From Stylophora pistillata (lineage: Eukaryota): a stretch of DNA of 64,000 nucleotides. The translations under genes were made by a program, and so were the position numbers. How positions within the stretch are numbered: position 1 is the first letter of the stretch; the number at the start of each line of letters is the position of its first letter. This document shows, one piece after another, positions 9,237 to 12,200 of this stretch. The stretch is taken from assembly GCF_002571385.2 (NCBI RefSeq), contig NW_019218304.1, positions 91,665 through 155,664 of the forward strand, read 5' to 3'. The notes under the pieces are model-generated. The model did no database searches. It was not told the DNA's origin and was given only the letters and a program-made list of their open reading frames with translations.

Positions 9237-12200
9237 ATGGCTGAATCGAGCGATGTCTCGGCTGTAAAAGTGTTTAATTATATCAGTGGAAGTGGTGGAG
9301 TTTTAGATTTATTGAGCTTACTGAAACATCCTTCGCCTTTGGCAAAGAAATCCACAGTGAATGAGGTGATTTTATGGTTCAAAACTCAGAAAGACATCGA
9401 CCCCAATAATAGATTGGTTTTGGTAAATAATCAACGTGGTGAGGCTGTTGGCGTGCGAATCGACTTAGCGAAACAATTGTGTTTAAAATACACCACCGAA
9501 GGGTCGTGTAAATCACGAAGCAGATGTAGATTCTGGCACTTATGCAAAGAGTTCCTTGAGGGAACTTGTAAAGGAAACTGTGGCCGATCACATGATTTTC
9601 ACGATGAAGACAACAAAGCGAAAATAGTGGAATTGGGTTTTGCAGGAAAAGCGACTGGGCCTTTGAAAACTATTGTTGCTGGAAGCTTCTTACAGGTTTG
9701 TCTCATGTATTCAAAAAATGGATGCGTCTCCCTAAATTGTCCGTATCTTCATATTTGTTTGAATGCGGCGCGTTTAACAGCCTGTGACTGTTTTCTGTCT
9801 CACAATTTCGCTGATCCCCACAATAGGAGCTTGCTACAACAGTATGGATACAAACCTCCCCGAACGTCAGAAATGGATGTCGTACGATGTAACATTCTGG
9901 TCCCTAAGCAGCAGAAATCCTTTGAAGGAAGGGCTATCGGTGACCCAAGCTTCATTAACCAACCCACACCCAGGGGAAGTGAGCCTGGTAATATTACACA
10001 GAAGTTTCCCCCGCGTCCGAGTAGACCTGGAGCTGTTAGTCTGGCAGGTTTATGCCAAAACTTTCCCAAAACTGAATCCAAAGCACCTACTCAATCTAAA
10101 CCAGCAATGCACCATATTGCTGTGCCTTCTAATGAAGACCCTCTCTTTGTGAAAGTTTTTAATTTCATATGTGCCAAGGGAGGTTACTCTTCATTAGCAG
10201 ACCTATTGCAACACCCCTCTCCATTGGCAAGGAAGTTTTCAACCTCTGAGGTCGATGCAACGATTTGGCTTCAAGTAAACACCCACTCAGAACAGGGACA
10301 GAAGATCATTTTGCTAGAGAACCAAAATGGTAATATTCTTGGTGCTCGGGTGAATTCTAGGAAAAAAATGTGTTTGCAGTATATGAAGGGTTCTTGTAAA
10401 TCTCTCAACACTTGTCAGTATTGGCACATTTGCAAAGGTTATCTTGAGGGAACTTGTCAGGGAGGCTGTGGTCTCTCACATGACTTCCATGATGAGGGTA
10501 ACATCAAGAAGATACAGAGATTGGACATCGAACAATATCCCAATGGAACTCTGAGGAAAATTATCTCTCACAGTTTTCCCAGAATTTGTTTGGCATACTT
10601 GAACACTGAATGCATATCCAGTCATGACTGCCCACATTTGCATATATGCCCTCTTGCTTTTGGAGGAAACCCATGCAGTTGTAACCTGTCACATGCTATA
10701 GATGATAACCATAATGCCACAATTCTAAAGCAGTTTGATTTAGATCCTCCGCGAACCAAATTATACCTAATGCAGTGCAACATCTTGATGCCAAAGAGGC
10801 AGAAAGGCCCAGCAGAAGGCAAGCTTGCCTCACGTCCAGCACCTTTGATGTCCTTGCCTTTAGCCCAAAAAGATGATAACCTGGATTCACAAGCCAAAGG
10901 GCTTCTAGATAAGAAGGGAAAGCAGAGGAGAAGGCAGCGAACGAAGGCGAGAAAAAAGACAAATCAAGCAAGCAAACCCAGTGAAGAATCACTTGCAGAT
11001 GATATCGAAGAGGGAGGTTCAGATTCAACCTCCGATAATGAAGATTTGCCCGACAAACCTGATCTTTACTCAGGATCAAAATTTTCGGCTCAGCCCAGAC
11101 CAAGCACAAGGCATGCTGATGGTTCAGAGAATCCATCCTTTCATTGTCAAAAGAAGCAGATGCAATCCGACAATGGGTTGACTTACCAAGACCAGGTTTC
11201 TGAAATGGGCATAAGTGAAACTCCTGAAAAAAATCTTATTAATTTTGATGAGCTAGAAGACGAATTGCAAGATTTGGAAGATCCATTTGGTTCACTAGAT
11301 GACTTCTCAACTTTTGAGCCTCTTTCTCAAGTTGATGATTTGCTCTTTAACCTGTCCCCCACAAATACTGCAGGAGCACTGTCTCAGGAGAGTACCTTTT
11401 TTGATCCATCTGACCAGGACAGCTCAGCAAGCAACCAAGAAAAACAAGCCGTAGACTCTGTTTTCCAGTACATTTGTAAAGAACACAATGGCGAGGCACC
11501 ATATGATGTAATATCCCAGTGCTACCACATACTTCCACCAGATGTTTTGGATATTTCTGCATGGTTCAGAGAAAACTCAAACAGGTTTATGATCATCGAG
11601 AACTGTGTGGGGGGAATTGAATTAGTAAGAGCACACACCTCTACAGCACGCATCTGTTTTCGGTACTTGATGAACAAGGCAGGCTGTAAGAATCCAAAGT
11701 GCTTCCGTTACCATGTCTGCAAGCATTATCTTGCTAACGGTGTCTGTCCTCTAGGAAAGAAATGCAGGTACAGCCAGAGTCATAATCTCAAAAGCTCACA
11801 CAACAAAAAAATCACTAAACAACAGAAGCTAACCTGTTTCTCAGAAGAGCAGCTACGTGTCATGATTTCTGCATCAGTCCCTGATGTTTGTCTTGCTTAC
11901 AACAAGAAATCAGCCAGATGTAAGAAAGGGCTACGGTGTCAAGCTGTTCATGTCTGTAAGTATTTTGTGATGGGCAGTTGCAAGAAAGGAACCAGTTGCC
12001 CTCTTAGCCACGAGGCAAGTCTCAAAGAACCCCATTCTCAGTTAGTTCTGGAGAAGTATAATTTGACCAAGGTTCCAGCCCAAGCTGTCTTAAGAGCCCT
12101 TCTGGTACGTGGGCAGCTGCTACCCTCAACAATGGAAACTGCAGAGGAACACGAAACAGGTAAGAAGTATAATCAATATTGCACCATTGTTACAAGAAAG

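What the first reader, a model, noticed from the sequence alone, without database searches (positions are those of the whole stretch)
9237..12159. Three tandem ZAP-type RNA-binding modules in one giant exon (PARP-A)
Seen: three repeats of a winged-helix-like start plus four CCCH-type fingers, beginning VFNYISGSGG (~9267), VFNFICAKGG (~10154) and VFQYICKEHNG (~11460), separated by low-complexity linkers. With the pre-WWE finger this gives about 13 fingers. Known: vertebrate ZAP and PARP12 have one such N-terminal module, and ZAP is thought to need multiple molecules on CpG-rich RNA. Inference: covalent triplication builds in avidity or broadens target recognition.
Basis: partly seen in the sequence, partly recalled or inferred. 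Interest (0 to 1): 0.75.

Follow-up and report, generated by a model that had tools for sequence, protein, structure and literature searches.

The report
Coral PARP with three ZAP-like modules
A stony-coral gene for an ADP-ribosylating enzyme carries, in one long exon, three copies of the four-zinc-finger domain that the vertebrate antiviral proteins ZAP and PARP12 carry once; similar arrays occur in other marine invertebrates.

Summary
Window 9237-12159 (+) is the first coding exon of Stylophora pistillata LOC111341797, a 1433-aa protein that RefSeq calls uncharacterized. It encodes three collinear ~235-aa modules separated by two disorder-type linkers. Each module is homologous to the N-terminal four-CCCH-finger domain (NZAP) of ZAP/PARP12. 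A spliced RNA contig carries the whole exon unbroken and joins it to exons 2 and 3. Downstream exons add a fifth finger, WWE and a PARP12-like catalytic domain with H-Y-I.

- The modules are PARP12-type, not ZAP-type. Pfam HTH_53 is not met.
- ZAP's CpG-contact residues are absent from modules 1 and 2 and only partly kept in module 3.
- Module 3, finger 2 has Gln at the canonical His position in this species.
- The array is heterotypic (alpha-alpha-beta), so plain avidity for one motif is unlikely.

The array is kept in 31 of 35 close homologues from both major stony-coral clades. A three-module Nematostella protein is one that a 2025 paper reports as cGAMP-induced. Arrays of 2-5 modules occur in corals, and 2-module arrays in amphioxus, a hemichordate and a nemertean. 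I found no paper describing such arrays. RNA binding and antiviral function are inferred. The scan's other notes on this theme lie in this same window.

The parts
9216..12159 (+). Exon 1 of LOC111341797 ('PARP-A'). The RNA contig starts at 9216, the ATG is at 9237, and a GT donor follows at 12160.
   Evidence: X1 contig of 3740 nt lies unbroken on 9216-12157, then joins 12928 with a cut +2. 100% identity to P0001.
9237..9956 (+). Module 1 (alpha type, aa 1-240). Four CCCH fingers between C82 and H189 (nt 9480-9803).
9957..10121 (+). Linker 1 (aa 241-295), Pro/Ser-rich and poorly conserved.
   Evidence: 13-60% identity to orthologues; mean top-residue frequency 0.44.
10122..10841 (+). Module 2 (alpha type, aa 296-535), four canonical CCCH fingers.
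10842..11432 (+). Linker 2 (aa 536-732). It has a basic K/R run and an acidic Ser/Asp/Glu tract, and holds short motifs conserved in at least 70% of 31 orthologues.
11433..12159 (+). Module 3 (beta type, aa 733-974), the module most like the ZAP N-terminal domain.
   Evidence: E 7.5e-10 to 6uei; PF25261, 40.8 bits.
11763..11783 (+). End of module 3 finger 2. Gln replaces the canonical zinc-binding His (aa 847), and a His follows two residues later.
   Evidence: 16 of the 20 homologues matched by the pattern keep His at both positions.
12930..13230 (+). Exon 2: fifth CCCH finger and the start of the WWE region.
   Evidence: joints (12157/12928 cut +2; 13230/13547).
13547..13742 (+). Exon 3 (WWE region).
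14371..14574 (+). Exon 4 (WWE, PF02825). Boundaries are approximate, from tblastn only.
15249..15506 (+). Exon 5 (start of the PARP catalytic domain). Boundaries are approximate.
15939..16373 (+). Last coding exon: PARP catalytic domain with His, Tyr and Ile at the H-Y-I positions.
   Evidence: (human PARP12 2pqf, E 1e-26).

Best explanation
Shown: the gene encodes a PARP12-family enzyme with the layout NZAP(alpha)-linker-NZAP(alpha)-linker-NZAP(beta), then a fifth finger, WWE domains and a PARP catalytic domain. All three NZAP domains lie in one unspliced 2.9-kb exon that is present in mRNA. The array is old and conserved. The alpha-to-alpha duplication predates the split of the two main stony-coral clades.

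Inferred: each NZAP module is an independent, net-basic zinc-finger platform that reads single-stranded RNA, as ZAP's NZAP does. Because alpha and beta modules differ in finger 2, one polypeptide would read two or three neighbouring but different short RNA features. That would give multivalent, combinatorial recognition. It would bring a catalytically competent mono-ADP-ribosyltransferase and a poly(ADP-ribose)-binding WWE unit to foreign RNA or RNA-protein particles, as part of an innate antiviral response. The flexible linkers set the reach between modules. Linker 2 probably also carries protein-docking motifs.
For: Anatomy:
- ORF and exon.
- Modules in register, with zinc-ligand columns invariant across the six modules of the window; the finger-4 middle Cys is offset between alpha and beta types.
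- Six-module profile hits ZAP N-terminal domains at E 3e-17.
- Alpha-only profile hits only ZAP N-terminal domains, at E 2e-8 to 1e-7.
- Language-model feature search on M1: nearest clusters are PARP12-like CCCH tandem (0.93, 0.91) and ZC3HAV1-like (0.90) (a lead only).

Transcription: one contig spans 9216-12157 and splices on to exons 2 and 3. Six stranded raw reads cross the same joint. No joint inside exon 1 is listed in any of the 4 runs.

Enzyme part: PARP 74.8 bits and WWE 35.6 bits. The last exon is closest to human PARP12, with H, Y and I aligned identically.

Conservation:
- 31 of 35 homologues have three modules.
- Modules are 48-83% identical to orthologues, against 13-60% for linker 1 and 30-72% for linker 2.
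- Module tree.

Immune link: Nematostella XP_001636351.2 has three full modules plus WWE and PARP. PMC11784840 (section 10 read) names it as one of two PARP12-like genes among those most induced by 2'3'-cGAMP.

Weaker support: all six modules are net basic, +3 to +15. An IRF-E-like motif lies 38 nt upstream of the contig start.
Against: - No RNA-binding, ADP-ribosylation or antiviral data exist for this protein or any multi-module relative that I could find.
- Human PARP12 gave no detectable RNA adducts in CLIP (PMC8102003).
- ZAP's CpG-contact residues are mostly not conserved, and alpha finger 2 has a 3-residue loop where ZAP has 9.
- M1 alone does not reach significance against ZAP. M1 and M2 fall below Pfam's PF25261 cut-off.
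- M3 finger 2 lacks the canonical His in this species.
- The cGAMP induction rests on another paper's supplementary data, which I could not see. The main text of Margolis 2021 has none of my PARP, ZAP, zinc-finger or ADP-ribose terms.
- The IRF-like motif is not statistically unusual: 44 of 100 shuffles give at least one match.
- Nematostella modules 1 and 2 pair with each other in the tree, so its array may not be strictly orthologous.
Confidence: 0.6

Rival explanations
1. The modules are not RNA readers. They serve as protein-, poly(ADP-ribose)- or membrane/condensate-targeting scaffolds, as suggested by human PARP12, whose fingers gave no RNA crosslinks. The array multiplies docking sites and drives assembly of stress-granule-like condensates around an active ADP-ribosyltransferase.
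For: [quoted passage not shown]
- The catalytic domain is closest to PARP12.
- The CpG pocket is not conserved.
- Long disordered linkers carry conserved short motifs.
Against: - The fold family is the one shown to bind RNA in ZAP (PMC10450202).
- All modules are net basic.
- The K89-equivalent basic residue is kept in all six modules, and an R-Y pair sits at the K107/Y108 positions in M3.
Confidence: 0.25
2. The array is a product of an arms race. Extra modules are decoys or spare copies that soak up viral antagonists of NZAP, or are neutral duplicates on their way to decay, and only one module does the work.
For: - Module number varies from 2 to 5 among hexacoral paralogues.
- Different families duplicated independently.
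- One finger in M3 has lost its canonical His in this species.
- A decayed alpha-module fragment lies at about 20.7-21.0 kb.
- Only 19 of 35 homologues show 4+4+4 fingers under a strict pattern.
Against: - All three modules are about equally conserved (mean top-residue frequency 0.75, 0.74, 0.75, against 0.44 and 0.60 for the linkers).
- Each A-type alpha module forms its own clade across both major stony-coral clades. That means long retention of each copy.
Confidence: 0.1
3. Artefact: the long ORF is a gene-model or assembly fusion of separate tandem genes, or the linkers are unrecognised introns.
For: None beyond the unusual exon length.
Against: - A spliced 3740-nt RNA contig covers 9216-12157 without a break and continues into exons 2 and 3. 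No internal joints are listed in 4 runs.
- There is no stop codon over 1000 codons.
- The same layout occurs in 31 of 35 homologues from many assemblies and transcript contigs.
Confidence: 0.02

Closest known systems
Human PARP12 (ARTD12)
   Same: Same order of domains: N-terminal four-finger NZAP, fifth finger, WWE, and a catalytic domain with H-Y-I. The coral catalytic exon's best solved relative is PARP12 (E 1e-26). Pfam's zf-CCCH_PARP12 family matches.
   Different: PARP12 has one NZAP (five CCCH fingers in all; PMC8102003). The coral protein has three NZAPs and 13 finger positions, with long linkers, and is 1433 aa long.
ZAP / ZC3HAV1 (PARP13), N-terminal RNA-binding domain (PDB 6uei, 3u9g, 6l1w)
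   Same: It is the only solved fold family hit by the modules over their whole length. The four-CCCH finger order is the same, and a basic residue sits at the K89 position.
   Different: - ZAP's finger 1 is shorter and its finger 2 loop is longer.
- HTH_53 is not detected in the coral modules.
- CpG contacts are mostly absent.
- Mammalian ZAP's catalytic domain is inactive (PMC8102003), whereas the coral one keeps H-Y-I.
- ZAP proper arose in the lungfish/tetrapod lineage (PMC12204182).
Nematostella vectensis LOC5516216 (XP_001636351.2 / P0206)
   Same: Three full NZAP modules (two alpha-like, one beta-like), then WWE and PARP. PMC11784840 reports it as strongly cGAMP-induced.
   Different: It is 1608 aa long. 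Its two alpha modules group with each other rather than with coral modules 1 and 2 (95/91 support, long branches). The array may therefore have arisen in parallel or been homogenised.
'PARP-B', the paralogue on the minus strand of this window (32165-35287)
   Same: One giant exon holds three NZAP modules, followed by the fifth finger and PARP exons.
   Different: Its order is alpha-beta-beta instead of alpha-alpha-beta. Relatives of this family reach four and five modules (P0037, P0038, P0036).
PARP14 (a line of RRM and KH domains ahead of the ART domain)
   Same: A PARP enzyme preceded by many nucleic-acid-binding domains in line, proposed to track a long RNA (PMC10450202).
   Different: The domain families are unrelated (RRM/KH against CCCH NZAP). 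This is an analogy of design, not homology.

Membership tests
PARP12-type CCCH-WWE PARPs (clade with PARP7, PARP12, PARP13) | N-terminal NZAP domain: a compact unit of four CCCH fingers plus helices. | tested here: met
   Met three times over. M3 vs 6uei gives E 7.5e-10. The six-module profile gives E 3e-17. The alpha-only profile gives E 2e-8.
PARP12-type CCCH-WWE PARPs (clade with PARP7, PARP12, PARP13) | Middle unit: fifth CCCH finger followed by two WWE domains. | tested here: inconclusive
   WWE PF02825 scores 35.6 bits at aa 1121-1188, which passes. The first WWE matches only as WWE_4 at 16.5 bits, below the 24.5 cut-off. A fifth-finger C-x7-C-x5-C-x3-H is visible in the protein sequence but was not scored by a model.
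PARP12-type CCCH-WWE PARPs (clade with PARP7, PARP12, PARP13) | C-terminal PARP catalytic domain with the mono-ART H-Y-I signature. | tested here: met
   PF00644 scores 74.8 bits. In the alignment to human PARP12 (2pqf), His, Tyr and Ile are identical. That the H-Y-I triad defines PARP12 is recalled, not taken from a call.
ZAP (ZC3HAV1) proper | Pfam HTH_53 N-terminal helix-turn-helix. | tested here: not met
   There is no hit at E <= 0.1 for any module. The best hit on the N-terminal pieces is M2 at E 0.15, 12.2 bits against a 30.6 cut-off. 0 of 61 representative homologues hit it. PMC12204182 says HTH_53 was gained within the ZAP lineage.
ZAP (ZC3HAV1) proper | CpG-binding pocket residues (K89, Y98, K107, Y108; also E148, K151, R170). 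| tested here: not met
   Positions were counted from the zinc ligands. M1 and M2 keep only the K89 equivalent, with Gly at Y98 and G-R or G-L at K107/Y108. M3 has K, Leu, R-Y. The residue list comes from PMC8102003 and PMC9253567.
ZAP (ZC3HAV1) proper | Catalytically inactive PARP-like domain and origin in the lungfish/tetrapod lineage. | tested here: not met
   The coral domain keeps H-Y-I. The organism is a stony coral. The origin of ZAP is taken from PMC8102003 and PMC12204182.

The most novel reading that the evidence does not exclude
Tandem NZAP arrays form a combinatorial non-self RNA reader. Alpha and beta modules would each recognise a different short RNA feature. One polypeptide with 2-5 modules in a lineage-specific order would then read a composite 'barcode' on viral RNA and deliver an active ADP-ribosyltransferase to it. 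On this reading, vertebrates reduced the array to a single module and replaced built-in multivalency with cofactors and oligomerisation. Repeated independent expansions in corals, anemones, amphioxus, hemichordates and nemerteans would record arms races with RNA viruses.
Probability: 0.2. Interest if true: 0.8.

Novelty: new variant of a known kind. Interest (0 to 1): 0.5.

Why it matters
Work on ZAP and PARP12 is based on vertebrate proteins with one RNA-binding domain. It is still unsettled whether ZAP has to multimerise on RNA. Here evolution has fixed two to five such domains in one chain and joined them to an apparently active enzyme. One such gene is reported as a top cGAMP-induced gene in a tractable sea anemone. 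This gives a direct way to ask two questions: what multivalency does for this domain, and whether RNA-directed ADP-ribosylation is an ancestral antiviral mechanism in animals. It also shows that current domain libraries under-annotate these proteins. Pfam passes threshold for only one of the three modules.

Tried and rejected
The Atlas holds no model of this protein. The fold claim therefore rests on sequence and profile matches only.

Winged-helix test:
- Pfam on the six N-terminal ~75-aa pieces at E <= 10 gave only M2 at E 0.15.
- An N-terminal-only profile against PDB gave two unrelated weak hits and no ZAP.
- Pfam over 61 representative homologues gave 0 HTH_53 hits.
I dropped 'winged helix' as a tested feature.

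M1 alone against PDB was not significant and was aligned out of register, fingers 1-2 onto ZAP fingers 3-4.

I used protein identity per region instead.

Literature: six searches found no description of tandem NZAP arrays. Searches (coral genus names; NZAP plus phyla) returned mostly irrelevant papers. The main text of Margolis 2021 has no PARP or ZAP terms. Fig. 7E and the supplements of PMC11784840, and the expression tables of PMC8713801, may show these architectures or the induction values.

Rejected readings:
- Assembly or annotation artefact.
- CpG-specific avidity like ZAP's, because the pocket is not conserved.
- The IRF-like motif as evidence on its own, because 44 of 100 shuffles give a match.

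Names were found for only 9 of the 30 representative clusters looked up. The taxa of the 4- and 5-module proteins (P0036-P0038) are therefore unknown, although they nest among coral modules in the tree. Modules covering less than 70% of the profile were left out of the counts and out of the tree.
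Full report
**What is there.** The window holds an uninterrupted ORF at 9237..12239 on the + strand (1000 aa). The coding exon ends at 12159, where GTAAG follows. The translation is 100% identical over its whole length to P0001, 'uncharacterized protein LOC111341797 [Stylophora pistillata]', 1433 aa. The organism is therefore a stony coral. tblastn of P0001 on the window places five further coding exons up to 16373.

**The three modules.** M1 and M2 are 43% identical (tblastn E 6.6e-56). M1/M3 and M2/M3 are 24-27% identical (BLASTP E 1e-12 and 4e-16). 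An alignment with the three modules of a paralogue in the same window shows the zinc-ligand columns of the four CCCH fingers invariant in all six modules. The exception is the middle Cys of finger 4, which MAFFT offsets between the two module types.

**Is it transcribed as one piece?** I laid four runs on 8800-13800.
- One 3740-nt contig (run X1) lies unbroken on 9216-12157. It then joins 12928-13230 and 13547-13742 through GT..AG joints. With the stated cut +2, exon 1 ends at 12159 and exon 2 starts at 12930.
- A raw stranded RNA run (X24) has 6 reads from 4 starts across the same first joint.
- Two poly(A) RNA runs tile 9241/9301-12157 in pieces.
- No joint inside exon 1 is listed in any of the four runs.
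The three modules and both linkers are thus in one mRNA. The artefact reading is rejected.

**What the modules are.** Results from sequence searches of solved structures:
- The whole exon hits only ZAP N-terminal domains, plus one splicing-factor finger protein. M3 (aa 745-926) matches human ZAP chain positions 15-194 of 229 at E 7.5e-10.
- M2 alone reaches E 6e-4.
- M1 alone does not reach significance (E 0.02), and the aligned pair of fingers is out of register.
- A profile of the six window modules hits ZAP N-terminal domains at E 3e-17.
- A profile of the three M1-like modules alone hits only the three ZAP N-terminal-domain sequences, at E 2e-8 to 1e-7, over nearly the full length.

Pfam gives zf-CCCH_PARP12 at 49.5 bits for the exon. 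Taken singly, only M3 passes the 27-bit cut-off (40.8 bits). M1 scores 17.1 and M2 scores 20.5. A language-model feature search on M1 gave PARP12-like and ZC3HAV1-like clusters as nearest (0.93-0.90; a lead only).

The fold is therefore inferred from homology, not modelled.

**What did not hold.**
- *Winged helix.* The 'winged-helix-like start' could not be verified on its own. HTH_53 is not met. An N-terminal-only profile finds no ZAP chain. None of 61 representative homologues hits HTH_53. The N-terminus aligns with ZAP's first helix only inside whole-module alignments, with moderate posterior probability. PMC12204182 (passages) states that HTH_53 and the 'ZAP type' finger fold were gained along the ZAP lineage. 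That fits a PARP12-type rather than ZAP-type module.
- *Finger count.* Under a strict C-x3-H pattern this protein shows 4+4+3 fingers. In M3 finger 2 a Gln sits at the canonical His position (aa 847) and a His lies two residues on. Of the 20 of 35 homologues matched by my pattern, 16 have His at both places. The other 15 were not matched and were not examined.
- *CpG pocket.* The CpG contacts of human ZAP are K89, Y98, K107 and Y108 (PMC8102003), and also C96/Y98, E148/K151/R170 and F144 (PMC9253567). Counting from the zinc ligands, they are largely absent. M1-like modules have a 3-residue loop where ZAP has 9, Gly at the Y98 position, and G-R, G-L or H-R at K107/Y108. M3 keeps K, R and Y at the K89, K107 and Y108 positions.

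**The rest of the protein.** P0001 has WWE (35.6 bits), a weak first WWE (16.5 bits, below cut-off) and PARP (74.8 bits). The last exon searched alone is closest to human PARP12 (E 1e-26), with the His, Tyr and Ile of the catalytic signature aligned identically. ZAP's own PARP-like domain scores lower. P0001 is the RefSeq model as the tool returned it.

**Two module types and their history.** I built a tree of 43 modules from 13 proteins. It splits them into an alpha class (M1-like, 20 rows) and a beta class (M3-like, 23 rows) with 100/100 support.
- Gene A is alpha-alpha-beta.
- Its M1 and M2 form sister clades. Each contains Stylophora and Oculina on one side and Acropora and Montipora on the other. 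The alpha duplication therefore predates the split of the two main stony-coral clades.
- The paralogue on the minus strand (32165-35287) is alpha-beta-beta. Relatives of that family have four (P0037, P0038) and five (P0036) modules.
The tree supports it.

**Conservation.**
- 31 of 35 word-search homologues have three modules, and 4 have two.
- Identity to nine orthologues is 48-83% in the modules, 13-60% in linker 1 and 30-72% in linker 2.
- Mean top-residue frequency is 0.75, 0.74 and 0.75 for the modules, against 0.44 and 0.60 for the linkers.
- Linker 2 contains short motifs kept in at least 70% of 31 orthologues.

**How common are arrays?** A profile search of 1.84 billion representatives gave 1475 proteins at E <= 1e-3. 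Among the best 150, the number of full modules (at least 70% of the profile) was as follows:

| Full modules | Proteins |
|---|---|
| 0 | 17 |
| 1 | 79 |
| 2 | 36 |
| 3 | 15 |
| 4 | 2 |
| 5 | 1 |

Names were available for 9 of 30 clusters looked up. Module counts for the rows below come:

| Taxon (protein) | Modules |
|---|---|
| Nematostella (P0054/P0206) | 3 |
| Montipora (P0043) | 3 |
| Acropora (P0046 cluster) | 3 |
| Branchiostoma (P0071) | 2 full |
| Ptychodera (P0073) | 2 full |
| Ptychodera (P0069) | 3 finger units without the N-terminal part |
| Tubulanus (P0070) | 2 full + 1 partial |
| Amphibalanus (P0081) | 8 partial finger units |
| Potamilus (P0163) | 1 |

In the coral's own genome, 17 matches at E <= 1e-5 fall in these places:
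- this window (3+3);
- contig C186 (3);
- contig C94 (2, in one 526-aa frame);
- C3802 (one module with a stop codon);
- C937 and C1180 (exon-split partial modules).

**Function.** None of this is measured.
- The link to immunity is that the Nematostella three-module protein (XP_001636351.2) is named in PMC11784840 (section 10 read in full). That paper lists it as one of two PARP12-like genes among the most up-regulated by 2'3'-cGAMP. The data behind this are in supplements that I could not open. The cited paper's main text has none of my search terms.
- All modules are net basic.
- An IRF-E-like motif lies at 9168-9178, 38 nt before the RNA contig start. 44 of 100 shuffles of the window give such a match somewhere.
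- Against RNA binding: human PARP12 gave no CLIP signal (PMC8102003).
- On the avidity premise: a review reports dimers for rat NZAP but not for human NZAP (PMC11414379).

**Verdict.** The best reading is a PARP12-family mono-ADP-ribosyltransferase with a conserved heterotypic array of three NZAP domains. It probably acts as a multivalent RNA-pattern reader in innate defence. My confidence is about 0.95 for the anatomy and about 0.5 for the function.

It is a new variant of a known kind. The proteins are in public databases, mostly as 'uncharacterized', 'PARP12-like' or 'ZC3HAV1-like'. Two evolutionary papers treat invertebrate members as having 'generally a PARP12/13 architecture' (PMC11784840; PMC8102003). 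Six literature searches found no description of tandem NZAP arrays.

Noticed in passing
window 32165-35287 (-), with further exons down to about 28511: The paralogue 'PARP-B' also has three NZAP modules in one giant exon, in the order alpha-beta-beta. Database relatives of this family reach four and five modules.
   Followed up: partly
window 9168-9178 (+): An IRF-E-like motif lies 38 nt upstream of the 5' end of the RNA contig. It is the only match in the window, but 44 of 100 shuffles give at least one match. The consensus is recalled, not taken from a call.
   Followed up: partly
window 12307-12640 (intron 1): A short repeat shows very high depth in all four runs (thousands, against about 50 in the exon). 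Loose ends on its two sides are reverse complements of each other. It looks like a high-copy small transposon of MITE type.
   Followed up: no
window about 20722-20960 (-): A relic of the N-terminal part of an alpha-type module with in-frame stop codons (tblastn 38% identity to module 1; translation). It is probably a decayed module fragment between the PARP genes.
   Followed up: partly
window 10842-11432 (linker 2): The linker is not plain low-complexity sequence. A basic K/R run and several short motifs in an acidic Ser/Asp tract are conserved in at least 70% of 31 orthologues. These could be docking or phosphorylation sites.
   Followed up: partly
window 9237-12159: CpG observed/expected is 0.43 in the exon against 0.80 for the whole window, with TG and CA in excess. 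This is the pattern expected of a methylated gene body.
   Followed up: no
G000 C186:2424-5546 (-), C94:698627-700114 (+), C3802:83-718 (-): There are further NZAP loci in the same genome. C186 holds a three-module frame; one of its modules scores exactly as one PARP-B module, so it may be a haplotig or a recent copy. C94 holds a two-module 526-aa frame. C3802 holds a module with a TGA stop.
   Followed up: no
window 48338-49726 (+) and 55838-56218 (-): Two more WWE/PARP catalytic-domain genes lie in the window (37-42% identity to PARP-A's C-terminus). The window is therefore a cluster of at least four PARP genes.
   Followed up: no
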